Origin: Ylistrum balloti
Taxonomy: Eukaryota
NCBI RefSeq assembly: GCF_031769215.1
Contig: NW_026781913.1
Location: 248,001-312,000, forward strand
DNA length: 64,000 nt
Reading direction: 5' to 3'
Positions 5,430-49,329 of the stretch are shown piece by piece; within the stretch, counting starts at the first letter, position 1; each line of letters begins with the position of its first letter. The translations under genes were made by a program, and so were the position numbers. The notes below the pieces were generated by a model. It was not told where the DNA came from. It searched no databases and saw only the letters and a program-made list of their open reading frames with translations.

Positions 5430-8400
5430 GTATTTGTTACTCTACAGAAGATCATGTATTTGTACTGTGAGTTTGTTACTCTACAGAAGATAATGTATTT
5501 GTACTGTGTGTTTGTTACTATACAGAAGATCATGTATTTGTACTGTGTGTTTGTTACTTCACAGAAGATCATGTATTTGTACTGTGTGTTTGTTACTCTA
5601 CAGAAGATCATGTATTTGTACTGTGTTACTTTACAGAAGATCATGTATTTGTACTGTGTTACGTTACAGAATATCATGTATTTGTACTGTGAGTTTGTTA
5701 CTCTACAGAAGATCGTGTATTTGTACTGTGAGTGTTACTCTACAGAAGATCATGTATTTGTACTGTGTTACTTTACAAAAGATAATGTATTTGTACTGTG
5801 TGTTTGTTACTTCACAGAAGATAATGTATTTGTACTGTGTGTTTATTACTTTACAGAAGATCGTGTATTTGTACTGTGTTACTTTACAGAAGATCATGTA
5901 TTTGTACTGTGAGTTTGTTACTCTACAGAATATCATGTATTTGTACTGTGTGTTTGTTACTTCACAGAAGATAATGTATTTGTACTGTGTGTTTGTTACT
6001 CTATAAAAGATCATGTTTTTTTACTGTGTATTTGTTACTCTTCAGAATATCATGTATTTGTACTGTGTGTTGTTACTCTACAGAAGATCATGTATTTGTA
6101 CTGTGTATTTGTTACTCTACAGAATATCATGTATTTGTACTGTATGTGTTGTTACTCTACAGAAGATCATGTATTTGTACTGTGAGTTTGTTACTTTACA
6201 GAAGTTCATGTATTTGTACTGTGTGTTTGTTACTTCACAGAAGATAATGTATTTGTACTGTGTGTTTGTTACTTCACAGAAGATAATGTATTTGTTCTGT
6301 GTGTTTGTTACTCTACAGAAGATAATGTATTTGTACTGTGTGTTTGTTACTATACAGAAGATCATGTATTTGTACTGTGTGTTTGTTACTTCACAGAAGA
6401 TCATGTATTTGTACTGTGTGTTTGTTACTCTACAGAAGATCATGTATTTGTACTGTGTTACTTTACAGAAGATCATGTATTTGTACTGTGAGTTTGTTAC
6501 TCTACAGAATATCATGTATTTGTACTGTGTGTTTGTTACTTCACAGAAGATCATGTATTTGTACTGTGTGTTTGTTACTCTTACAGAAGATCATGTATTT
6601 GTACTGTGTGTTTGTTACTTCACAGAAGATAATGTATTTGTACTGTGTGTTTGTTACTCTACAGAAGATCATGTATTTGTACTGTGTGTTTGTTACAGAA
6701 GATCATGTATTTGTACTGTGTTTGTTACTTTACAGAAGATCATGTATTTGTACTGTGTATTTGTGAATATCATGTATTTGTACTGTATGTGTTGTTACTC
6801 TACAGAAGATCATGTATTTGTACTGTGAGTTTGTTACTTTACAGAAGTTCATGTATTTGTACTGCGTGTTTGTTACTTCACAGAAGATAATGTATTTGTA
6901 GTGTGTGTTTGTTACTTCACAGAAGATAATGTATTTGTTCTGTGTGTTTGTTACTCTACAGAAGATAATGTATTTGTACTGTGTGTTTGTTACTATACAG
7001 AAGATCATGTATTTGTACTGTGTGTTTGTTACTTTACAGAAGATCATGTATTTGTACTGTGTTTGTTACTTTACAGAAGATCATGTATTTGTACTGTGTT
7101 TGTTACTTTACAGAAGATCATGTATTTGTACTGTGTTTGTTACTTTACAGAAGATCATGTATTTGTACTGTGTTTGTTACTTTACAGAAGATAATGTATT
7201 TGTACTGTGTGTTTGTTACTTTACAGAAGATCGTGTATTTGTACTGTGTTACTTTACAGAAGATCATGTATTTGTACTGTGAGTTTGTTACTCTACAGAA
7301 TATCATGTATTTGTACTGTGTGTTTGTTACTTCACAGAAGATAATGTATTTGTACTGTGTATTTGTTACTCTACAGAATATCATGTATTTGTACTGTGTG
7401 TTGTTACTCTACAGAAGATCATGTATTTGTACTGTGTATTTGTTACTCTACAGAATATCATGTATTTGTACTGTATGTGTTGTTACTCTACAGAAGATCA
7501 TGTATTTGTACTGTGAGTTTGTTACTTTACAGAAGTTCATGTATTTGTACTGTGTGTTTGTTACTTCACAGAAGATAATGTATTTGTACTGTGTGTTTGT
7601 TACTTCACAGAAGATAATGTATTTGTTCTGTGTGTTTGTTACTCTACAGAAGATAATGTATTTGTACTGTGTGTTTGTTACTATACAGAAGATCATGTAT
7701 TTGTACTGTGTGTTTGTTACTTCAAAGAAGATCATGTATTTGTACTGTGTGTTTGTTACTCTACAGAAGATCATGTATTTGTACTGTGTTATTTTACAGA
7801 AGATCATGTATTTGTACTGTGTTACTTTACAGAATATCATGTATTTTGTGAGTTTGTTACTCTACAGAAGATCGTGTATTTGTACTGTGAGTTTGTTACT
7901 CTACAGAAGATCATGAGTGTTACTCTACAGAAGATCATGTATTTGTACTGTGTTACTTTACAAAAGATAATGTATTTGTACTGTGTGTTTGTTACTTCAC
8001 AGAAGATAATGTATTTGTACTGTGTGTTTGTTACTTTACAGAAGATCGTGTATTTGTACTGTGTTACTTTACAGAAGATCATGTATTTGTACTGTGAGTT
8101 TGTTACTCTACAGAATATCATGTATTTGTACTGTGTGTTTGTTACTTCACAGAAGATAATGTATTTGTACTGTGTGTTTGTTACTCTATAAAAGATCATG
8201 TATTTGTACTGTGTATTTGTTACTCTACAGAATATCATGTATTTGTACTGTGTATTTGTTACTCTACAGAATATCATGTATTTGTACTGTTACTCTACAG
8301 AAGATGTGTTGTTACTCTACAGAAGATTGTATTTGTACTGTGAGTTTGTTACTTTACAGAAGTTCATGTATTTGTACTGTGTGTTTGTTACTTCACAGAA

Positions 8401-9048
8401 GATAATGTATTTGTACTGTGTATTTGTTACTCTACAGAATATCATGTATTTGTACTGTATGTGTTGTTACTCTACAGAAGATCATGTATTTGTACTGTGA
8501 GTTTGTTACTTTACAGAAGTTCATGTATTTGTACTGTGTGTTTGTTACTTCACAGAAGATAATGTATTTGTACTGTGTGTTTGTTACTTCACAGAAGATA
8601 ATGTATTTGTTCTGTGTGTTTGTTACTCTACAGAAGATAATGTATTTGTACTGTGTGTTTGTTACTTTACAGAAGATCATGTATTTGTACTGTGTTTGTT
8701 ACATTACAGAAGATCATGTATTTGTACTGTGTTTGTTACTTTACAGAAGATCATGTATTTGTACTGTGTTTGTTACTTTACAGAAGATCATGTATTTGTA
8801 CTGTGTTTGTTACTTTACAGAAGTTCATGTGTTTGTACTGTGTGTTTGTTACTCTACAGAAGATCATGTGTTTGTACTGTGTGTTTGTTACTTTACAGAA
8901 GATCATGTATTTATACTGTGTGTTTGTTACTCTACAGAAGATCATGTATTTGTACTGTGTCTTTGTTACTTTACAGAAGATCGTGTATTTGTACTGTGTG
9001 TTTGTTACTTCACAGAAGATCATGTATTTGTACTGTGTGTTTGTTACT
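5430..9048. repeat. 39-bp minisatellite array (~3.6 kb, roughly 95 units; shorter deletion variants)
   Basis: Consensus TTTGTTACTCTACAGAAGATCATGTATTTGTACTGTGTG; 13-aa periodicity in the ORF track. Confidence 0.98.
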
Positions 9049-9420
9049 TGTCATTCTTCTACTGGAGAAATTGATGTTACAGCAGATTTGTTTCAAATTT
9101 GTTTAAGATTGCATAACTTTACGACAATGTTGGACGGATGTTTACATAGGTGATTTTAATGCAAGATGTTTTGATTTGACTGGTTTTTTTGTTGGTGTTG
9201 ATGATGCTCGAGAAAGGGACATTATTGACAAAACCATCAATGTTTTACCAATCCTTGATTTTGGTAGAAGGAGGTTACCGGTGAACTATATCACTATTCC
9301 AAAAATGACAGCTCCTCAATATAAAATATTTTAAAGTTCACTTGATGTCAAATTAATGGGAAACATTTGATATGACAGAGGGAACAAAATTGTGTCTGAC
9401 CAGTCATCGTAAGAATTTTA
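9049..9420 (+). mobile_element. Decayed LINE apurinic-type endonuclease fragment
   Basis: Hand translation gives DVYIGDFNAR (GDFNAR at 9149-9166), DKTIN (~9227) and a later GRRRLPG/YSKNDSSSI stretch where the LNGR..SxIDY motifs are expected. Stops and frameshifts present. Confidence 0.6.
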
Positions 9421-9639
9421 AGTCCAGTTTTAGAAAGTAGTTATGCAGTAAGCCAGATAAAACCCATTTTATAACAACACGCGTGATCTGCTTGAGGATA
9501 TTTTTTAGATGATGACGATACCATCAGAGAAATGTTGTCATCTTTTGACTCTGAACTCCAAGACAAACATAAAGAAATACTACTTATAGATGTTTCCTGT
9601 CACTGATTAGTATGGAAGCTGATTTCTGTCATTTCTTTT

Positions 9640-9806
9640 TGTCGCACCGACAGAACGATAATCATCGTCTTTGCACCCCCGCGAACTACCGTCTTTTCGT
9701 CGCGACAAAACAATAATCATTTGTCCTGTCGCTCTGCTAATTATCGTCTTTTCGTCGCGACAAAACAATAATTATCGTCCTGTCGCCCTGCTAATTATCG
9801 TCTTTC
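9640..9806. repeat. Short ~55-bp tandem duplication (CGTCTTTTCGTCGCGACAAAACAATAAT...) with a partial third copy
   Basis: Two near-identical copies at ~9689 and ~9745; related CGACAGAACGATAAT upstream. Confidence 0.7.
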
Positions 9807-38083: not shown

Positions 38084-38211
38084 GTGGGTCATGTGATATA
38101 AATATCTAACGATGTTCTCTAAGATGGCCACCATCCCCTGACAGGAAGTGGGTCATGTGATATAAATATCTAACGATGTTCTCTAAGATGGCCACCATCC
38201 CCTGACAGGAA
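38084..38211. repeat. Perfect 64-bp tandem duplication spanning the stop codon of gene B
   Basis: 38084-38147 is identical to 38148-38211. Confidence 0.95.
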
Positions 38212-41200
38212 GTTAAGCCAACCATTGGAAAGGGCCGTACTGTCCGTATCCGGGTCTGACGTAATAGAGGGCGTGGTTTTCTTGGGAGTTTCATTTTCCA
38301 CTGGGCTGATGGCATTCTTCTTCTTCCATGGAGAACCCGTGACTGTAAAATAAAAACTAAAATATAATAACATTTTGACCAGCCTCTATGTGACTTCGGT
38401 TCTACTGTCGGCTGTGTTACACAATGTGATTATAAATCGGCACTTCATTTGATTAAGTTGTGGTAGAAATATTTCTTAGTTTCATGCTCCTATTAAAGAA
38501 AAACTCTTTTTGCAACTTATCATAAATGCGCGTAGCTTAGCGCATTCGTGACAAGTTAGCAAAGAGCTTATAATTAATTCATTAAATACGCTGCAGAAAC
38601 AAAAATATCACATTAATAAATGAAATTGATAATTCAGCGCAGAATTATTTCATACTTATCACTACGCATGACAGTTTACATGACATGACGTAACGTCATT
38701 CGCGCCATTTCAAGTCATTCAAAATTCCAAACGGAATCTATAGTGTATTTAAAATAACAGTCTCTCCTCGTAAATGCGTTATTTATTCATTGTTTGTGTA
38801 TATTGTAAGATATTGAATTCTTTTTATGTTGTAGTTTTTTTCCATCACCGAATGACAGTAATCAAAACATCAGATGAATGTGTAAACAGCTATTCCATTC
38901 ATACAAAAAAGTAGTTCCAACAGACCCGCAAGATGGCATATCAACATCGAATCCGACAATCATTATCAAGTTGGCGGAGCTAGATTTTTTTCGATCGATC
39001 TATCAAAAGAAAAAATCGTGCAAACAACGAAAAATTAATTATAGATAAACGAACCTCCTCCTCCGCCACCTCCACCTCCTCCGAACACTGTGAATGGGGG
39101 AGCGCCACCTCCGGGCGAGCTGTCCCCGGGGGAGCCATTTTCATTCTCCAACAGATGTCCTTTCCAAGCAGCCCCACCTGTGGGACCTCCGCCTATTTGA
39201 AATACAAAGATACAATGCAAACTATGGCAATACTACAAAAACACATCCCACAATCATTTACTTCAAAGTTCATGGAAATATGAACATTTTAATGAATAGA
39301 CAGAGACAAGACGAAAACGCCAGGACTGTATATCGAATTAAGTTGCTTGTCTAAATGTCAAGTAGGTTGATATCAAATAAGTTTATCGTCCAGTTTCATT
39401 CAATCCTAAATCTGAACTCAAAGTTATATCTGTTTACATGAAGTATACATAGACATTATTTGTGTTTTTAATCTGACTTACTTCCGCCCCCACAGTAACA
39501 AGCACCTGCCCCACCGCCGGGACCCCCAGTTGGCGAACACACCGGACAGCACGTAGCGAAGCACGTCCCACATGAAATACAGCACGGACAGTTCCTTAGT
39601 CTCGCGCATCTCCAAGGCAACCATCCAGGTCTACAGCAGCACCAGTAGAGGACACTGAGGCCGACTATGAGACCAACAACGATGTAGAGGGGAGTAAAAT
39701 CTGGGGGTGGAACAGGGGGCGCTGGGGTCGTCGTTGTTGGCTTTGGCTTTTTGGGTTCTGTAATCACATACAAGTGCGATGTATACATGTTCCCCCACAC
39801 GTGATATATAACAATTTTTATTACATAACACGCCGTATTTGATCTATATGAACTTTAATCAAATACTTTCTGATATTTCCATGAAAAAAACAGAGCTCAC
39901 TGTGACATCAAAAAGAACGTCACATGAAAATCCCCAGAAGACGTTGACTTCATCGTTATAATGTCATCTGGCTGCGGTAGGGGCAAGGAAGTTTGTTTTG
40001 TGTTACTAAGAGAGAATTAAAACAATTAAAACAAGATGTCTTAGTAACACATACCGGAATGTATTCAGTAAGGACTTCTAAACCATAGTTTGGCTAAACG
40101 TTATATGAAGTTCGTAAAAAAAGAAACCCTGCTGCGGCAAGTTTGTTTTAATATTTTTATGACATAAGTATGTAATAAAAGATATATATATTCACCATTA
40201 TCACTATACCACGAGAGAGAATGATATATCTGTTATCATGTTAACTGGTCATGTGATAAAGAAAATCACATACAAAGCGGTCACATGATGTCACAAAATT
40301 AGAAAAAAAAGTTAACGTCATTTAAATAACCAATCATAGTATCAATCTGTCCACAAAGTTTTCCTTAAGCGTTAACAGGATTTAATTTTTTTACGTTTCA
40401 TGTTGGTATAAAGAAAACCCATCGTGTAAACTGAATAAATACTATGATACTTTTATATCAAAGCTTATAATTAATTTCTTAGATAGGAGTCAAAAACAAA
40501 AATAAAACATGGCTGTATAAATTTGATAATTTACTGAGGGATTATTTTACTACAAATCACTACGCATAACAGCTGGCGTGACATGACGTGACGTCATTGA
40601 CAGCTAAATCGCGCCATTAACAGTCATTTAAAACTCTTTCATAAGTGGTCCCGTCACATTCCAAAATGAAATATGACAAAGTGTAAAATAACATTTTTCC
40701 CTGATAAATCTGTTATTTATTCATCATTTGTTGTTTATTAACATTGTAAACTATATGGATACTTTATTATGTTGTGGTCCGTTGGTGACGGCGATCCACA
40801 CACCCAGAGAATATAAACAGATAGTCTAATCATAAAAATGAAGATCAAATAGGCTCGCCGCAAGGTGGCGTGTTGCCATTGATTCCTCCAATCATTATCA
40901 TGTAGGTACATACAATAATGGTAGAGATGTCGTTATAATCACGTGTACATGTAAGTATATACAATAATGGTAGAGATGCTATAATTACGTGTACATGTAG
41001 ATATATACAATAATGGTAGAGATGTTATAATCACGTGTACATGTAGTTAATGAATACATTTACAACATTACCAACATGTTATCGTTTGATAATACCGGAG
41101 ACAAATAATTGTTATTAACACGCGTTTACAACAGCTGAGTTAAGACTTCAAAGATGACGTTTAAATTACATGACGTCATGCGCATCGTAACGTCAAGATA

Positions 41201-44200
41201 TTCGGATTATTATTTTTATTTTTTTATTTTTTTTTATTTATATTTATACTTGTCTGGTAATGATAATATGACTAACATATGTAACCGCGGTGGATTCACG
41301 TGCACATCGCATGTTATGAATACACACACGTATACCAATAAATGACAGCCATAACCATTATAATTACGATAATAAAAAAGGACGGGTTCAGATCTGTGTG
41401 AGGGCCAAGAGGAGGGACAGGGGAGGCTGTGGATGTAGTAACAGGCTTTTTGGTTTCTGTAATTATAAAATTGTGTCTTTTACCATGTGTACATATGTAT
41501 ATGTATTGTTACAGACTATATATACTTAAACGATAAAAATCAAAATCAGTCAGGCGCTGGTTGAACGAGATATAAGAGTGAACGGTTTGTTTTGTATTAG
41601 TTACATGTAAGGTTTACGGCAGACCACATATACTGATGCTTTCATTTTGGATTATATTCGGAAATATATATGTTATAGAGAGAACATCATTTCTGATGTA
41701 AATGGTTGGCTAAGTGATCAAATCGTGCTGCAGGAATAAATTTAGTAAATGTTTTCGGTAAAGAGTATTCTTCATAAAAAAACGTCATCTGCCATTAAAT
41801 CTAGTTTTAAGAGAGGATTACATGTATAATGACAACAGTTTAAGTTCCATGTCGTAAACAATAGTTTAAGTTCCATGTCGTAAACAATAATTTAAATTCC
41901 ATGTCGTAAACAATAGTTTAATTTCCATGTCGTAAAAAATAGCTGAACTTCTATGTCGTAAACAATAGTTTAACTTCCATGTCGTAAACACTAGTTTAAT
42001 TTCTATGTCGTAAACAATAGCTTAACTTCCATGTCGTAAACAATAGCTTAACTTCCATGTCGTAAAACTACTACTACAAGTCCATTTGAGAGTGGACCCA
42101 TTTGTCTTTTGCAGGCCATAAGAAGAGTAGATGACTTGTCGAGATTAAGACGTCCTCGCGTAACAAACCTTAAGTCTCGTCTTCTCGCGGCGAGAAGAAG
42201 AAATAACGATAATTTAGGTTTTCGGTTTTGATTCTCTTCTTTTCGCTGCACAAATCAGGCAGTTTAGTGCCAAGCGACAATGTATCGCAACTAGTCAACT
42301 CACCAACACTGTCACACCGACCAGATCGTTTGCGATAGCTGGAGTACATACATTTAATGAATAATAGTTTACCTACGAGACGTCAGTTACGTACTGACAA
42401 TGAGTGAAACAGCATCGAGGCGAACATTTTTCTGACATATGTGTTTTAGAAGAATGATGACTTTTACGTTTGATCGGTTCAGGATTTGGTGGATCTACTG
42501 TGTCAGTATAACGGACATCCACTATCAAAGACATCTAATGTTCTCCATTTCTGAGGGAGCATCGTCTCGCCTGATGTCATCGTCGGAAACCCTCGAGACT
42601 CTTCACGACTTCGTGGATTTTCGTCTTTTGTAGGAACTTAATTATCACAAATAAATATCGTTCAGACATGTGAGCCTCGATTTCACTCCGGTCCCAACTG
42701 CGAACACGTGTAAGATGAACTAGACAGAAGAATTCGCAATTTTCCTGGCATCCCTACCCAACCATCTTAATACACTCTCCTAGTTATCCAATGATCTCGT
42801 GACAGAATGGAATTACCTTATAAATTATATAGAACTTAGGTTTAGAACTGTTTCAACTGTTCAATGTGGACAAACTCAATAGAAGGCTGATTTCAAAATT
42901 AGTTTTATTTATCTTACTACACGCGAAGTATTATTTTGTTTCTAATCTGAATAAAAATAAGGCGTTTTCCAAAATATTATATATTGATCATTAAAAAGCA
43001 ACCTTTTTAATCAACCTGTCTATTCAACTTTGAGTTGCTTGATTATTTCAGTGTATATACAGTGGATGTGACCGAGAATATACATGTGCGCGCGTGTGAT
43101 CAGATTACGGTCTACAACTAAACAATGATTGGTATATCTCCTGAACAATGATTATACTTCACTGGCGAGTTAGGGAACACTTTCTGTTACTATCTATTAA
43201 CGCCAATGAGGATTTGTTGATGTAGATAAAATAAGTACTTACTTCCACAATTTCCGGGATACTTCTTGCTAACATCCGATGAATCTTTCGGGAAGAACTC
43301 GGTGAGACAGTTCTTGGAGTACCAGTAATCACATCGAAGAGAATCATCTAGACATCGCTTACTATCGTTACACATCATCACCACGCCTTCGACCGTTTCA
43401 TTACATGCTGAAAAAAGTAGAATCAACATAAACAGTTTGAAATGAATTAAAATATGATATGATCATACATTATTATCATCTCTTCGACGAGGAGTGATTT
43501 TGTCGATACAATGATTAAATATTTAGCTTCACACATCACTTTTTTTGTATCATTTTCTCCACAAATATATTTCGAAACATCTAAGTTGCTTTTACCGTAA
43601 CCAAAGGACGTAACGTCGAGCTTGAAGAAGACCTCAGGATAATCGAAATCGTCCACAGGCGTCGTTGCTTTTGGATCAAGCGTAGCGGAGGTGTCAGGTG
43701 GTAGTGTTGTCCCGTTGCCAAGGGCGGGGTTTCGGTAGTCAAGGTAGAAATAGAGAGTGATGTACTCCCCCTCCCACTCATAGGATGGCGCTACAGTGTC
43801 CACCCCACAGAGCGTGAAGAACTGGGTAGCGGCTGCCTTGTCTTTACCATTATACATCGTCACGTAGGCCTTCCCACAATCCTTCGCGGTCGTCGATCCG
43901 AGCCTCTTTTTCACCTTTGGGTCATGGATTAGAAATTCCCGCCAATAGATACCCATGTAGCGCTTTTCTGGTGGGAACACTCCTGGGGTCGCCGGCATAC
44001 CGCGCACGATCACGGTACATTCCAACAGCTGTCCTTTGAGCTGTTCCGCGATGTTGACCTTAGGTTTGGACTTCTCATTAAAAACTAGGTCCCTGTCAAA
44101 CTCAAGATATGCTCCAAAGTCAGGACCAAGCACGTGACCACAAGACTCCGTCACAAAATCTGAAGAAAATTCAAATACCCAATTTTCAACATTTTTTCAC

Positions 44201-44865
44201 ACATCTGTCCTCTTGGTTTCAGAAACAAAAAGTTAAAGATGTTTGCTGATTTTCCTACGAATATAAGAATTTTACAATCAAGCTATGCCATAGCCAAGAG
44301 TCTTAAGTCACATTGAAGTTAGATATACCACTCTCCTTGATGGTAATCATGTTATGCAAATCATTTAAACTTCAATTATTGAACTCGTTTGATAAAATCT
44401 ATAGTACTATTGGCGTGACACTCTTACAGAAATTTCTGTTTTTAAAGTTGGGCTTCACTGCCCATTACAACCCTGGTAGTTCCCGTAAGTAATAACACGT
44501 ATGTCATGACGCCGTACATAACACAAGTTGTTTCCTAAGTTTAACAGGGTAAATAAGCAGAAGACACTGACATTTTCGGCAAAATGATGTTATTGTGTAT
44601 GTAATGTTGCTTAAATTAGTATTTAAGAAGATTTGAAGTGCGGAGATTTTTTTTTCATTTCAAAACACGCGATGGATTTGATGAGTGAAAATATTCTTTG
44701 GAATTTTGGATCAGTCAAAACGCTATCGATTTGAGTTGACTTCAATCTCCAGTGTTGTCTGAACTTCTACAAAATGAAATGAAATGAATGTACTACATTA
44801 TATTTAGCATCCATAGATCCCTAGACTTTCCCAACATAGTTCAGTAAAATACTCACATCTTTCAT
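38170..44865 (-). CDS. Gene B: divergent CUB-LDLa-stalk-TM protein with Cys-rich and Gly-rich cytoplasmic tail (466 aa model)
   Basis: Exons 44865-44857 (MKD), 44534-44459 (signal-like; weak donor GTGAAG), 44159-43596 (CUB-like), 43407-43243 (6-Cys LDLa-like), 39757-39482 (Pro/Thr stalk, TM YIVVGLIVGLSVLYW, 14 Cys), 39192-39055 (Gly-rich), 38342-38170. Phases consistent, 1401 nt total. The first two exons are less certain. Confidence 0.85.
38560..38965. repeat. Dispersed repeat, copy 1 (diverged copy at ~40455-40900)
   Basis: Collinear shared blocks GCTTATAATTAATT, ACTACGCAT..TGACATGACGT.ACGTCATT, ATTTATTCAT, TTATGTTGT, TAAACAG, CCGCAAG.TGGC, CAATCATTATC. Confidence 0.7.
40455..40900. repeat. 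Dispersed repeat, copy 2
   Basis: Same blocks and orientation as 38560-38965. Confidence 0.7.
40900..41045. repeat. ~48-bp tandem repeat x3
   Basis: ACATGTA..TACAATAATGGTAGAGATG..TATAATCACGTGT repeated three times. Confidence 0.85.
41314..41456 (-). CDS. Duplicated stalk+TM exon of gene B ending in a stop (candidate alternative terminal exon)
   Basis: Acceptor ATTACAG|AAACCAAAAAGCC versus ATTACAG|AACCCAAAAAGCC for the main exon. Same phase; open to TAA: KTKKPVTTSTASPVPPLGPHTDLNPSFFIIVIIMVMAVIYWYTCVYS*. Confidence 0.65.
41833..42066. repeat. 26-bp minisatellite (~9 units) in a gene B intron
   Basis: Unit ATAGTTTAAGTTCCATGTCGTAAACA. Confidence 0.93.
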
Positions 44866-45590
44866 TTCTGCCGTCACTTAATGACACCTGGAGTAGAAAG
44901 AAAAGAAAATAAGAGAGAAGGAACTCCATGTTGCTTAATAGTCCTGATCCTGTATCTGTAGAACTCTATAGTGACGTCCAGCTCGTTGTTTTTGTGTATA
45001 AAACACCTGAGTTTGGTATATATGTAGGGGGTCAAATAGGAGGGGTTTGTCAGTTTTATATAGCTTCAGTTTAAACACGTGCAATTTACCAATACGTGCC
45101 AGTACAATTGTACAATTATCCAAAAATTATCATTAACGAGTTTATTTTTCGAAACTTCTTTTCTTGAGCTTCATTCATTTTCGAATTTATTTGATTTTTC
45201 TCCTTGTGATCCCCAAATGACAGACCCCATTTCTAGATTCACAACATCACGCCGCCGTAGCGAGGCGATTCGCCTGCCCCTATCAGGAATGTGCAATAAA
45301 AGGAAATGGCACGGTATAGGAGAGTTCGACACTAGTGCATATTCTTGGGAGCGTCCACTATGTGTATACAATACTAGAAACTACTAACAGTGGTGTTGTG
45401 AATATTGTTATACATCTTTCAATATGTATAGTCTTCTTAAAATACCACAAACGGCGATACAGCTTGTTTGAAGACAACAGTGACACATTTAAATGAAGGA
45501 TACCGTAAACAATCCTGCTGCTATGTCGCCGCGATCTGTTATAACCGCTGCCTTTACCCAATCCTACATTGTGTGTGGGCGGTTACTCAC

Positions 45591-46949: not shown

Positions 46950-49329
46950 ATGACGGTCACTTTTCTCGTCCGACTGGCCTGGATTGTCTGGTCATTCGGA
47001 TTGGTCGCCGGACACAAACACGCCAAACATTGGAAATCAGGTAGCTATGTTACGAAACAAAGCATGTTTGATATGAATTATATAAAAGGACAAATACGAG
47101 ATTCTATAGACGACTTGGAAATCACTTCATAAACAGGAAATCTTCATAACAAAGTAAAGTGTTCTGAAATATTTCGTCAATTGTGTTGAAAGGGAATTCA
47201 GTCTACAGACATTACCAGTGACAAACATCAAGCTTGTCAATAATAACATAATCATTTTTCGAATCACCGTATAGAGAAAAACCACTGCTAGAGCTTAACT
47301 CGTGGCAAATCCTCAGGAAGGTTTGTTTGGTCAGAGTCATATGAAACCGTCTTCACGAATAATGAGGCCACTGGTGGACGTTTTTATAGTGTCCTCACAC
47401 TGAAATGCCATAACATTTATATAGCAGAATCGTTGTGTGCTTCACAAAATAGAAGCTTCATTTGAAAATGGGATTTTCCACTATTTTTTTTACACTAGTC
47501 TGCCGAATATAGTGAAGGTGTGGCGACATACAATTAAACATCTTCATCGTTGTCCATGTTGCCAGTTTCAGTGTCTGTCTTGTGACCTCAAATTCATGCA
47601 AATCTTTTTGAAAAAAGGCAAATTAACTGTTAAGATTTGAAGCTGAACTATTGTTATTGGAGCACGACTTTGTCCGCTGGAGCTGGATTATTGATATTAT
47701 CTATGTCATGTCTCATTGAAAGTTCGGCCTAAATTGTTCCTGTGTCATCGAGAAAAGAAACTTTGTGATACTGACAAAATTAACGTTAATCTTACGTTGT
47801 TACAATTTAAATATGCTATTATGCATGGATCACGCAGTCAGAGTCTGTTGACAGTTTACATGCAATCTTTTACGACTAACAGACGAGCTCAAACCATAAT
47901 ACGTCCCGACTTTTGATTGGCATATTTGAAAGAAGCTTGAACGTCAGCCACCCCCTGGTATTTGAGACTTTGTATTATATGTAGCATGTATTATAAACCT
48001 CTCTAAATCTTACAGAGTTCCTGGAGGACCACTGCAGTCGTAAGATCAAACTACACTTGTTTCAGAGATTTGAATTGACACGTGATTTGTTCTACAAACA
48101 TGGATGGCACTGTGACGTCACACTGGAGGCACCAGCCCATCACGTGGTGGCGATTGCGTTTCAGAAGTTTGATATCGGTCGCTCGAAATCGGTAGTCTGT
48201 GAAGACGCCTTACGAATATATGACGGTAAGTAGAGTGTAGACAATAAGAAATTCAGTTCTGGTATGATTTTGGTGTGAAGGTTGAATGCTAGTCATGCTT
48301 TTAACTCTCCATATAGCGTCAATAATTGGTACCGGAAATTACATTTTTCGTGTCGGAGTACGTCTCCATCTTTATAGTTACACTTAATAACATTTTATGT
48401 GTTTCTAAATGTGTACTGTTTGTTTTCAGGTGATAGTATAAGATCGTCAACAAACAAAGGCCTTTGTGGTCAGATGATACCGCAACATGTCATGTCCAGT
48501 AGTAACACACTGACCCTCAAATTCAAAAGCCGGTACATCACGACTGGTGCAGGTTTCACTATAGACGTCACAACACTTGGAGGTACAGTTCTGGGATTGA
48601 ACAACAGGGTTCCGGGAACTGTGGTCAGGAAATCACTGTCCGTTCTTTTCTGATGTTAGAAAATGATACAAAACCGTCAGGGGTTTAATCAGAATGACGA
48701 ATGATATAATCGACAAATGAGTTGTAATTCTAGTTGTAGTTTTTCTTATAACATGACGTTGACTTTAATTTCTTCAAAATCATTCTTTTCGTTGAGGAAG
48801 CTGAATCCGTACCTCGGAAATTAGTGAAACACTGGGCGATGAAGGAATTTTTCAGGCCAAGTTACGATTTTAAGCTGTTATCTGTTCCAGTTGCTGAAAA
48901 CGATAGTGATTCCAATCCAGATTCCAGTTCATGTCCAGACAACAGTTTCCGGTGCATGGAAACGTTTTGTCTTGACCGAACTTTGGTATGTGACGGTGTA
49001 CCAAACTGCCGCGACAAATCAGACGAGTCTGCAAACAGCGCAGGCTGTGCAGGTAAGCTATCGCCTAGCAATGCTCTATATCAGTTTTTGTTAATTGTGT
49101 TCAACACAACAGATTAACATAAGGAGCTGTTTGATGTGCCGAGGTATTTACTTTTTATTTTTCAGGGTTGGGAGCTAGTTGGATCGACTTGAGCGTCGGA
49201 GCGAGAGTAGCCATATTTTTTGTCGTTTCCTTTCTCCTTATCGGAATGTGTGTAATGATTATATACTGTTTGTGTTGTCCAGCGTCAGCCAAACCTGTGG
49301 CCGCTTATCTATCCTACAAAAAGATTTAG
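46950..49329 (+). CDS. Gene C: signal peptide-CUB-LDLa-TM protein with short tail (259 aa)
   Basis: Exons 46950-47040 (MTVTFLVRLAWIVWSFGLVAG...), 48016-48225 (EFLEDHC..CDVTL..FQKFDI..CEDALRIYD), 48430-48582 (LCGQMIP..SSSNTLTLKFKS..GAGFTI), 48891-49052 (LDLa CPDNSFRCMETFCLDRTLVCDGVPNCRDKSDE), 49166-49329 (TM VAIFFVVSFLLIGMCVMIIY, CLCC, ends SYKKI*). All phase 1, 780 nt total. Confidence 0.92.

What the first reader, a model, noticed from the sequence alone, without database searches (positions are those of the whole stretch)
41314..41456. Duplicated stalk+transmembrane exon in gene B: candidate switch to a tail-less isoform
Seen: 1.5 kb upstream (in gene sense) of the main TM exon lies a homologous exon with an almost identical acceptor (ATTACAG|AAACCAAAAAGCC versus ATTACAG|AACCCAAAAAGCC), the same phase 1 and an intact frame. 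It reads KTKKPVTTSTASPVPPLGPHTDLNPSFFIIVIIMVMAVIYWYTCVYS* versus KPKKPKPTTTTPAPPVPPPDFTPLYIVVGLIVGLSVLYWCCCRPG. The hydrophobic stretch is kept despite heavy substitution, and the stop falls just where the Cys tail would start. It is absent from the ORF track because it has no start codon. Inference: an alternative last exon giving a 318-aa anchored decoy lacking the whole cytoplasmic domain, versus the 466-aa form.
Basis: partly seen in the sequence, partly recalled or inferred. Interest (0 to 1): 0.7.

Follow-up and report, generated by a model that had tools for sequence, protein, structure and literature searches.

The report
Conserved spare stalk-and-membrane exon in scallops
A scallop receptor-like gene carries an unannotated second copy of its membrane-anchor exon that ends in a stop codon; four scallop species have kept it and three keep it readable, so it probably encodes a tail-less form of the protein, though no RNA data could be checked.

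Summary
Window 41456..41314 (minus strand) is a diverged copy of the stalk+transmembrane exon at 39757..39482. It has the same acceptor and the same phase, and its stop falls where the Cys-rich tail would begin.

The window is Ylistrum balloti, gene LOC132559951, an uncharacterised CUB-like/LDLa-like single-pass membrane protein. The RefSeq model uses only the main exon.

- **Age:** the copy sits in intron 3 of Pecten maximus, Mizuhopecten yessoensis and Argopecten irradians too. It is absent from oyster, pearl oyster and mussel.
- **Origin:** copies and main exons form two clades (100/100), so there was one old duplication and no gene conversion.
- **Constraint:** synonymous sites are saturated (dS about 1) and the introns do not align. 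Even so, three species keep the acceptor, the frame, a hydrophobic helix and the stop.
- **Selection:** dN/dS is 0.14-0.41 and variation is concentrated at third codon positions (p=1e-4). A. irradians is frameshifted.
- **New feature:** the stop and the next ~30 nt form a conserved inverted repeat with the 3' splice site of the main exon. This may act as an RNA switch.

No RNA evidence was obtainable, so use of the exon, terminal versus cassette mode, and the "decoy" role are all inferred.

The parts
44857..44929 (-). Gene B exon 1: ATG plus signal peptide (MEFLLSYFLFFLLQVSLSDGRNER), ends in phase 1
   Evidence: Sequence. It matches the start of M. yessoensis XP_021379343.1 (P0016). The Y. balloti RefSeq model (P0014) does not use it.
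43596..44159 (-). Exon 2: divergent CUB-like domain
   Evidence: It is 82-85% nt identical to the other scallops, with dN/dS 0.02-0.05. CUB scores below Pfam's cut-off in oyster and ark-shell orthologues.
43243..43407 (-). Exon 3: LDLa-like Cys-rich module; its donor after 43243 (phase 1) serves both acceptors
   Evidence: Conserved in all scallops.
41457..41476 (-). Conserved 3' splice-site region of the duplicated exon (TTTTATAATTACAG)
   Evidence: TTCTATAATTACAG is kept in P. maximus and M. yessoensis. A. irradians has TTCTATAATTGTAG.
41314..41456 (-). Duplicated stalk+transmembrane exon: 47 codons, then stop TAA at 41316-41314
   Evidence: Orthologous copies are at L010:12560-12705, L013:5883-6025 and from L011:7943. 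dN/dS is 0.14-0.41 with a third-position bias.
41289..41325 (-). D1: conserved block covering the last codons, the stop and ~25 nt beyond; contains an invariant CACGTG; one arm of the inverted repeat
   Evidence: It is the best-conserved part of the copy (87.8% to A. irradians; alignment). It is complementary to U2 in all four species. It occurs once in the genome.
41215..41238 (-). Three AATAAA hexamers 76-100 nt downstream of the stop (candidate poly(A) signals)
   Evidence: Their position is not conserved in the other species, and the intron is AT-rich.
39758..39799 (-). U2: 42 nt just upstream of the main exon-4 acceptor, reaching into the CAG; the other arm of the inverted repeat
   Evidence: Duplex with D1 is -34 kcal/mol here, reached by at most 1 of 500 shuffles. 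It is the longest conserved acceptor-upstream stretch in the gene, 31-45 nt against 2-25 nt for the other exons.
39482..39757 (-). Main exon 4: stalk, transmembrane helix and Cys-rich juxtamembrane segment (phase 1 to phase 1)
   Evidence: It is used by the RefSeq models P0014, P0016 and P0006.
39055..39192 (-). Exon 5: Gly-rich cytoplasmic segment
   Evidence: Conserved at 84-87% and matches P0014.
38170..38342 (-). Exon 6: cytoplasmic end with the family-wide C-terminal motif ...LSGDGGHLREHR, stop at 38172-38170
   Evidence: The motif is conserved from scallops to mussels and oysters.

Best explanation
The segment 41456..41314 is an old tandem duplicate of exon 4 (stalk + transmembrane helix) of Ylistrum balloti LOC132559951. 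That gene encodes a signal-peptide, CUB-like, LDLa-like, single-pass membrane protein found across pteriomorph bivalves.

The duplicate arose once, before the four scallop lineages sampled here diverged and after their split from oysters, pearl oysters and mussels. It has since been kept as a protein-coding alternative exon.

**How it would work.** When exon 3 (donor after 43243) is joined to the acceptor at 41456 instead of 39757, the reading frame continues through a Pro/Thr stalk and a roughly 20-residue hydrophobic helix. It then stops 5-7 residues later. The product keeps the whole ectodomain and a membrane anchor, but lacks the 148-residue cytoplasmic part (Cys-rich juxtamembrane segment, Gly-rich region and the conserved C-terminal GDGGHLREHR motif).

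**What is shown:** the duplication, its age, the intact acceptor, frame and stop in three of four species, and purifying selection at the codon level.

**What is inferred:**
- that the exon is spliced in;
- that the transcript ends at a poly(A) site in the following intron, which is likely in Y. balloti where three AATAAA lie 76-100 nt downstream;
- that the tail-less form modulates the full-length form, for example by taking up ligand or partner without signalling.

**A further inference, with about 0.4 confidence.** The choice between the two acceptors may be set by a conserved 37/42-nt inverted repeat. One arm (D1, 41325-41289) begins at the duplicate's stop codon. The other (U2, 39799-39758) covers the branch-point, pyrimidine and AG region of the main exon. 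Pairing would hide the main 3' splice site and favour the duplicate.
For: - **Identity.** Window exons 2-6 are identical to XP_060080572.1 of Y. balloti.
- **Presence.** The copy lies in intron 3 of P. maximus (L010:12539-12733), M. yessoensis (L013:5862-6048) and A. irradians (L011, around 7943-8112). It is the only alignable part of that intron.
- **Single origin.** Copies and main exons form two clades at 100/100.
- **Scallop-specific.** In C. virginica intron 3 is only 110 nt. Pinctada and Mytilus show no second hit.
- **Frame kept.** Three species keep an open frame from the conserved acceptor to a stop right after YWYTC(V/A). Their indels are 9 and 3 nt.
- **Selection.** NG86 dN/dS is 0.14-0.41, with pS of 0.50-0.71, the same as in exon 2 (0.48-0.67).
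- **Codon positions.** Variable sites by position are 15/17/32 of 45 (Fisher p=1.2e-4). On a nucleotide-only alignment they are 16/19/30 (p=0.004). Changes specific to Y. balloti are 6/6/14.
- **Neutral expectation.** A neutral simulation gives P of about 0.008 that three lineages stay free of stops, before indels are counted.
- **Inverted repeat.** It is in register in all four species, at -34.0, -23.9, -42.2 and -26.3 kcal/mol. At most 1 of 500 dinucleotide shuffles reaches these values. Three column pairs are compensatory.
- **Whole-region fold.** In the 1.85-kb fold of Y. balloti, 29-31 of 38 D1 bases pair with U2.
Against: - No transcript evidence of any kind.
- No RefSeq isoform and no transcript-derived protein with this C-terminus appeared in two protein searches whose length ranges covered it.
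- In A. irradians the exon is frameshifted (+2 nt) and its acceptor context has changed, so it would stop before the helix.
- The copies evolve 2-6 times faster than the main exons. Only 45 codons and three species carry the selection tests.
- Poly(A) hexamers are not positionally conserved and are expected by chance in AT-rich introns.
- The helix has no basic residues after it.
- For the RNA switch, whole-region folds pair D1 with U2 only in Y. balloti. In M. yessoensis D1 pairs with the region upstream of the duplicate, and in P. maximus and A. irradians with neither.
- A gapless Watson-Crick scan sees only a 15-nt core among many chance pairs.
- Cross-species arm combinations pair as well as same-species ones.
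Confidence: 0.55

Rival explanations
1. The copy is a non-coding pseudo-exon kept for an RNA-level role. The duplicate is never translated. Its conserved parts (the acceptor-like sequence and D1) would act as a decoy 3' splice site and/or an intronic structural element that tunes splicing of the main exon. D1 could alternatively act as a DNA element, since it holds an invariant CACGTG E-box.
For: The most conserved piece is D1, which lies at and after the stop and pairs with the main 3' splice site. No annotation uses the exon. A. irradians tolerates a frameshift yet keeps D1 and the complementarity.
Against: An RNA-only role does not predict third-position-biased variation (p=1e-4 and 0.004), dN/dS of 0.14-0.41, in-frame indels, conservative I/V/L/M exchanges in the helix, or stop-free frames (P about 0.008).
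Confidence: 0.15
2. The copy is a stop-carrying cassette ('poison') exon. It would be spliced in between exons 3 and 4 using a weak donor, either CAC|GTGAAT at 41300/41299 or GT|GTATTC at 41324/41323. The resulting mRNA would carry a premature stop and be degraded, lowering gene output rather than making a protein.
For: Donor-like GTGAAT/GTGCGT and GTAATC/GTATTC are conserved in all four species. No poly(A) signal is positionally conserved. Real donors of this gene include weak ones such as GTAAAA and GTTCGT.
Against: Both candidate donors lack G at -1, and in three of four species lack G at +5. They lie inside the D1 arm, so their conservation is explained by the repeat. Codon-level constraint on the stalk and helix is not expected if the product is destroyed.
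Confidence: 0.12
3. The exon encodes a GPI-attachment signal rather than a tail-less helix. The hydrophobic C-terminus with no cytoplasmic residues would be cleaved and replaced by a lipid anchor, as in NCAM-120 versus NCAM-140/180.
For: The protein has an N-terminal signal peptide. A C-terminal hydrophobic stretch of about 20 residues runs almost to the end, preceded by a 6-7 residue polar spacer (HTDLNPS, DRDPSP, HTDPNP). There are no basic stop-transfer residues.
Against: No run of small residues suitable for the attachment site is visible upstream. Every candidate S/N/D/G is followed by Pro in all three species (my own reading of the sequences against the published omega-site rules). No GPI predictor was available.
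Confidence: 0.08
4. The copy is a dead duplicate decaying neutrally, and its similarity across species is only residual.
For: It has long branches (0.23-0.45 against 0.06-0.17 for the main exons), a frameshift in A. irradians, and loss of the ancestral TAA in Y. balloti, where it is read through to the next stop.
Against: The rest of intron 3 cannot be aligned between any pair of species, and synonymous sites are saturated. A neutral segment should not be recognisable at all, let alone keep its acceptor, frame and stop.
Confidence: 0.05

Closest known systems
Alternative exons born by tandem exon duplication (reviewed in PMC9013439 and PMC9741552)
   Same: A homologous exon sits in tandem in the preceding intron. 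It has the same acceptor phase, is ancient and is under purifying selection.
   Different: Classic cases are mutually exclusive substitutions that keep the frame into the next exon. Here the copy carries a conserved stop and has no in-frame donor, so it truncates the protein rather than swapping a segment.
Long-range RNA pairing that governs choice between duplicated exons: Dscam docking/selector sites, competing structures (PMC6071210, PMC1431710), and FGFR2 IIIb/IIIc IAS2-ISAR (the last from my own knowledge)
   Same: Conserved complementary segments flank tandem-duplicated exons. In M. yessoensis one arm can pair equally well with either of two homologous partners (U1 or U2).
   Different: One arm overlaps the stop codon of the upstream copy, and the other is the 3' splice site of the downstream copy itself. 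Function is untested and whole-region folds agree in only two of four species.
Anchor or tail switching by an alternative terminal exon placed before the transmembrane exon: NCAM-120 versus NCAM-140/180, and tail-less TrkB.T1 (from my own knowledge)
   Same: The ectodomain is unchanged. An alternative exon supplies a different C-terminal anchor and removes the cytoplasmic domain.
   Different: In those genes the alternative exon is not a duplicate of the transmembrane exon. Expression is documented there and not here.
LDLRAD2-like CUB + LDLa single-pass membrane proteins
   Same: The order is signal peptide, one CUB-like domain, one LDLa-like module, stalk, transmembrane helix. The nearest ESM Atlas clusters are LDLRAD2 (feature score 0.91; structure TM 0.37-0.59). 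Neighbouring paralogues hit Pfam CUB and Ldl_recept_a.
   Different: The scallop proteins hit no Pfam family. Oyster and ark-shell orthologues reach only 18.7-20.6 bits for CUB, against a cut-off of 21.4. The cytoplasmic Cys cluster and the C-terminal GDGxHLRE(H/Q)R motif are specific to this bivalve family.

Membership tests
Exon-duplication-derived alternative exon | Homology to an adjacent exon of the same gene | tested here: met
   19/20 nt at the start. A cross-species hit between copy and main exon reaches E=8.5e-6. The tree gives two clades at 100/100.
Exon-duplication-derived alternative exon | Intact splice acceptor in the same phase as the parent exon | tested here: met
   TAATTACAG| in phase 1 in Y. 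balloti, P. maximus and M. yessoensis. The context is altered and the frame shifted in A. irradians.
Exon-duplication-derived alternative exon | Purifying selection on the encoded peptide across species | tested here: met
   dN/dS is 0.14-0.41. The codon-position bias gives p=1e-4 and p=0.004. Only 45 codons and three species are involved.
Exon-duplication-derived alternative exon | Inclusion in mature mRNA | not testable with these tools
Mutually exclusive exon pair | Copy has a donor that keeps the frame into the next exon | tested here: not met
   A conserved stop lies inside the exon. The only conserved GT sites end in phase 2 or lie after the stop, while exons 4, 5 and 6 all accept phase 1 (with exon arithmetic).
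Alternative last exon / intronic polyadenylation | Poly(A) signal shortly downstream of the stop | tested here: inconclusive
   Three AATAAA lie at 41238-41215 in Y. balloti. In the other species the nearest hexamers are 42-554 nt away and not aligned, in an AT-rich background.
Splicing control by long-range RNA pairing | Complementary arms conserved in register across species, beyond chance | tested here: met
   All four species pair D1 with U2. At most 1 of 500 shuffles reaches the observed energy, and U2 is the top-ranked partner in the gene for three species.
Splicing control by long-range RNA pairing | Compensatory substitutions and a stable structure in context | tested here: inconclusive
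   Three compensatory and five one-sided column pairs among four species. Whole-region folds give D1:U2 in Y. balloti, D1:U1 in M. yessoensis, and neither in the other two.
CUB-LDLa membrane protein (LDLRAD2-like) | Pfam CUB and Ldl_recept_a domains above threshold | tested here: not met
   No Pfam hit for the window exons or for P0016. CUB is below threshold in P0013 and P0010. The Atlas similarity is a lead only.
GPI-anchored isoform | Small-residue attachment site upstream of a C-terminal hydrophobic signal | tested here: inconclusive
   The hydrophobic end and the polar spacer are present, but candidate sites are followed by Pro (sequences). No predictor was available.

The most novel reading that the evidence does not exclude
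The duplicate and its flanks may form a two-state RNA switch kept throughout scallop evolution. The block that begins with the duplicate's stop codon (D1) can pair with the region upstream of the duplicate's own acceptor, which loops the duplicate out and yields the full-length receptor. Alternatively it can pair with the 3' splice site of the main exon, which hides that site and yields the tail-less, membrane-anchored form. The stop codon itself would then be part of the regulatory stem, created by an inverted copy of the acceptor sequence (ATTAC read as GTAAT).
Probability: 0.25. Interest if true: 0.65.

Novelty: new member of a known kind. Interest (0 to 1): 0.45.

Why it matters
If the exon is used, RefSeq annotation of at least three scallop genomes misses a conserved protein isoform of a bivalve-wide, uncharacterised receptor-like family. 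That isoform keeps the ligand-facing part and the anchor but drops the conserved cytoplasmic domain, which is a simple built-in way to damp or redirect signalling.

The locus would also be a compact natural example of how tandem exon duplication plus a small inverted repeat can create both a truncating alternative exon and the RNA structure that might regulate it. It can be tested with a 2-3 kb minigene. It has no wider consequence beyond bivalve gene annotation and the catalogue of structure-guided splicing.

Tried and rejected
- **A larger segmental duplication: rejected.** The collinear similarity 38565-38974 / 40462-40906 is an interspersed repeat with at least 47 matches genome-wide, at the same 65-80% identity. 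It is absent from the orthologous loci.
- **Transposon ends as the origin of D1/U2: not supported.** The 271-nt stretch holding D1 occurs once in the genome.
- **An antisense acceptor in D1: rejected.** No AG is present in any species (read).
- **A mutually exclusive exon joined in frame to exon 4, 5 or 6: rejected** on phase.
- **Gapless inverted-repeat scan.** It sees only a 15-nt core (arms 39775-39789 / 41297-41311) among many chance pairs, so the repeat does not stand out in one genome without wobble pairs, bulges and cross-species register.
It was folded in a script instead.
- **Two Logan contigs of a more distant scallop-like species** (L012, L017) end before the position of the copy.
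- **The look-up of encoding contigs for the window's own protein P0014** found nothing, because own-genome records are withheld.
- **PDB sequence search** gave no meaningful hit. **Earlier-findings word search** was blank.
- **Third protein word search and the big representative search: not spent.** The first two searches already covered the length of a truncated isoform and found no scallop transcript-derived protein for this gene.
- **No joined spliced model was built or searched.** Exons were handled by reference, and protein lengths come from exon arithmetic only.
Full report
**1. What is in the window**

- An acceptor TAATTACAG| at 41457/41456 is followed by AAACCAAAAAGCC.
- In phase 1 there are 47 codons: KTKKPVTTSTASPVPPLGPHTDLNPSFFIIVIIMVMAVIYWYTCVYS.
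- A TAA stop follows at 41316-41314.
- The main exon starts 1,699 nt further on, at 39757, with TGATTACAG|AACCCAAAAAGCC. It reads KPKKPKPTTTTPAPPVPPPDFTPLYIVVGLIVGLSVLYWCCCRPGW... and runs to a donor after 39482.

From the sequence and cross-species conservation the gene has six exons:

| Exon | Window coordinates (minus strand) | Content |
|---|---|---|
| 1 | 44929-44857 | signal peptide |
| 2 | 44159-43596 | CUB-like domain |
| 3 | 43407-43243 | LDLa-like module |
| 4 | 39757-39482 | stalk, helix, Cys-rich segment |
| 5 | 39192-39055 | Gly-rich segment |
| 6 | 38342-38170 | conserved C-terminus |

The junctions from exon 3 onward are all phase 1. By exon arithmetic the full-length protein is 462 residues and the form ending in the copy is 314.

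**2. Which gene and genome**

A word search with the exon-2 frame found Pecten maximus LOC117338546 at 86% identity. A second search, with that protein as query, found Argopecten irradians XP_069114556.1 and more distant orthologues in Pinctada, Mytilus, Tegillarca, Saccostrea and Crassostrea.

The 90% cluster of the Argopecten protein also holds Mizuhopecten yessoensis XP_021379343.1 and Ylistrum balloti XP_060080572.1. The Y. balloti protein is letter-for-letter the window's exons 2-6, so the window is Y. balloti.

All full-length orthologues share three features:
- the ectodomain;
- a Cys-rich segment right after the helix;
- the C-terminal motif (L/M)(L/V)(S/T)xDGxHLR(E/G)(H/Q)R.

None of the four scallop records is labelled as an isoform, and none uses the copy. 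No protein ending in the copy turned up, although both searches covered its length (129-411 and 197-626 residues).

The family is uncharacterised. Pfam gives nothing for the scallop proteins and only sub-threshold CUB hits for two orthologues. The ESM Atlas places it next to LDLRAD2-type CUB/LDLa proteins, which is a lead only.

**3. The copy is old and orthologous in four scallops**

Comparing the window gene with the three other scallop loci gives hits to every exon. Inside intron 3 there is one further hit, the copy:
- P. maximus L010:12539-12733, 68.5% identity;
- M. yessoensis L013:5862-6048, 69.7%;
- A. irradians L011:8064-8112, 87.8% over the 3' end, with the rest visible in alignment.

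Nothing else in the intron aligns. A maximum-likelihood tree of the four copies and four main exons separates them at 100/100 support. There was therefore one duplication before these lineages split and no later gene conversion. The copies' branches are 2-6 times longer than those of the main exons.

The copy is absent outside scallops. Intron 3 of C. virginica is 110 nt, those of the two Pinctada paralogues are about 190 and 400 nt, and the 2.6-kb Mytilus intron shows no second match.

The two repeat copies at 38565-38974 and 40462-40906 are an interspersed element. They have nothing to do with the duplication.

**4. Is the copy under coding constraint?**

Neutral divergence among these species is saturated. 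Exon 2 has pS of 0.48-0.67 (dS 0.8-1.7) and dN/dS of 0.02-0.05.

Against that background, Y. balloti, P. maximus and M. yessoensis all keep the following:
- the acceptor TT(C/T)TATAATTACAG;
- an open frame in phase 1;
- a hydrophobic helix (FFIIVIIMVMAVIYWY, FYVIIVLIIIASILYWY, FYIIVGLIIVISILYWY);
- the motif YWYTC, written with synonymous differences;
- a stop immediately after (TAA in two species). In Y. balloti that codon is TAT and the next TAA, two codons on, is used.

Other measures point the same way:
- **Indels.** Those among the three species are 9 and 3 nt.
- **Substitution rates.** Pairwise pS in the copy is 0.50-0.71, the same as neutral. pN is 0.22-0.27, giving dN/dS of 0.14-0.41.
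- **Codon positions.** Variable sites by position are 15, 17 and 32 of 45 (Fisher p=1.2e-4).
- **Alignment check.** A nucleotide-only alignment gives 16, 19 and 30 (p=0.004), so the bias is not an artefact of protein-guided alignment.
- **Window species.** Changes private to the Y. balloti lineage are 6, 6 and 14, so the constraint holds in the window's own species.
- **Simulation.** Neutral evolution at the observed synonymous divergence leaves all three lineages stop-free in about 0.8% of runs, before indels are counted.

A. irradians is the exception. A +2 shift near the start of the exon and a changed acceptor context (TTGTAG) would give a stop after 29 codons, before the helix. No alternative in-frame AG exists. 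The helix frame downstream is still open and hydrophobic there. This suggests either a recent loss or an assembly error.

**5.

The best-conserved part of the copy is not coding. It runs from the stop onward, TCATAACATGCGATGTGCACGTGAATCC, and is identical in Y. balloti and A. irradians.

Scanning each species' gene for the best RNA partner of this block (D1) gave the same answer in Y. balloti, M. yessoensis and A. irradians. The partner is the 40-odd nt immediately upstream of the main exon-4 acceptor (U2). In P. maximus U2 ranks among the top four of about 1,100 windows.

The duplexes are collinear in all four species and reach into the CAG of the acceptor.

| Species | D1:U2 energy (kcal/mol) |
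|---|---|
| Y. balloti | -34.0 |
| P. maximus | -23.9 |
| M. yessoensis | -42.2 |
| A. irradians | -26.3 |

At most 1 of 500 dinucleotide shuffles of either arm reaches these values. D1 is about 75% identical to the reverse complement of U2. On this reading the stop, TAA within GTAAT, is the complement of ATTAC in the acceptor.

Of about 30 consensus pairs, most hold in three or four species. Three show changes on both sides (C:G to U:A, A:U to G:C, G:C to A:U) and five are one-sided G:U changes.

U2 is also the longest conserved acceptor-upstream stretch in the gene, 31-45 nt against 2-25 nt for the other acceptors.

Several caveats apply:
- In M. yessoensis D1 pairs equally well (-44.2) with the homologous region upstream of the copy's own acceptor.
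- Whole-region folds give D1:U2 in Y. balloti (29 of 38 bases by pair probability) and D1:U1 in M. yessoensis. In the other two species D1 pairs with neither.
- Cross-species arm combinations pair as well as same-species ones.
- A gapless scan sees only a 15-nt core among many chance pairs.

I therefore treat the pairing as real and conserved, and its regulatory role as a hypothesis.

**6. Mechanism**

The most likely reading is as follows.
- Exon 3 can be joined either to the main exon, giving the full-length protein, or to the copy.
- The copy supplies a stalk, a membrane helix and a stop.
- The resulting ectodomain-plus-anchor protein lacks the 148 cytoplasmic residues.

Terminal-exon use is plausible in Y. 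balloti, where three AATAAA lie 76-100 nt after the stop. The hexamers are not positionally conserved and the intron is AT-rich. A cassette mode through a weak donor inside D1 cannot be excluded. Either mode encodes the same protein, because the stop lies in the exon.

Pairing of D1 with U2 would occlude the main 3' splice site and favour the copy. Pairing of D1 with the copy's own upstream region, which is strong in M. yessoensis, would do the opposite.

A GPI-signal reading of the hydrophobic end is possible. It is weakened by prolines after every candidate attachment residue.

**7. Comparison with what is known, and verdict**

This matches three known patterns:
- alternative exons created by tandem exon duplication (PMC9013439, PMC9741552);
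- RNA structures that flank such exons (PMC6071210, PMC1431710);
- anchor or tail switching by an alternative exon placed ahead of the transmembrane exon (NCAM-120 and TrkB.T1, from my own knowledge).

It fails the test for a mutually exclusive pair, because it has a stop and no in-frame donor. It is unannotated in all four RefSeq-annotated scallops.

I rate it a new member of a known kind, of moderate interest. The conserved stop-codon/3'-splice-site inverted repeat is the most original element.

- No RNA run was offered.
- Only four species were available.

Noticed in passing
window 38084-38213: A perfect (100%) 64-bp x2 tandem duplication covers the last codons and the stop of gene B, so the ...FLSGDGGHLREHR* ending is written twice. 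The first copy ends the protein and the second lies in the 3' UTR. It is either very recent or an assembly artefact.
   Followed up: partly
L010:14462-14773 (P. maximus exon 4): The RefSeq model XP_033755795.1 (358 aa) reads exon 4 out of frame after ...TTTTPAPP and has no transmembrane helix. The locus has one extra C in a C-run compared with the other scallops. Exons 5 and 6 are conserved downstream but not annotated. This is probably a homopolymer error or a real frameshift.
   Followed up: partly
window 44857-44929: The Y. balloti RefSeq model XP_060080572.1 starts MRLENITQSSGH and lacks a signal peptide. A conserved signal-peptide exon, matching M. yessoensis XP_021379343.1, lies here unannotated.
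   Followed up: partly
window 38565-38974 and 40462-40906: These are two same-orientation copies of an interspersed repeat with at least 47 matches in the genome at 65-80% identity. One lies in intron 5 and one between the copy and the main exon. The orthologous scallop loci lack them.
   Followed up: yes
window 41832-42066 and 40899-41046: Intron 3 holds a 26-bp x9 tandem array and a 46-bp x3.2 array. These explain much of the extra intron length compared with the other scallops.
   Followed up: no
window 48057-49329 (+): The neighbouring paralogue on the other strand has clear Pfam CUB (two exon pieces) and Ldl_recept_a hits and a helix followed by CLCCPAS. Similar CUB+LDLa genes flank the orthologues in P. 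maximus, A. irradians, M. yessoensis and C. virginica, so the cluster is conserved.
   Followed up: partly
L015 (Pinctada imbricata, P0007): The 612-aa model is a fusion of two tandem paralogues of this gene, at 1001-2599 and 8180-9734.
   Followed up: no
window 41297-41302: A CACGTG (E-box palindrome) inside D1 is invariant in all four scallops, and overlaps a GTGCAC palindrome in Y. balloti and A. irradians. A DNA-level role was not examined.
   Followed up: no
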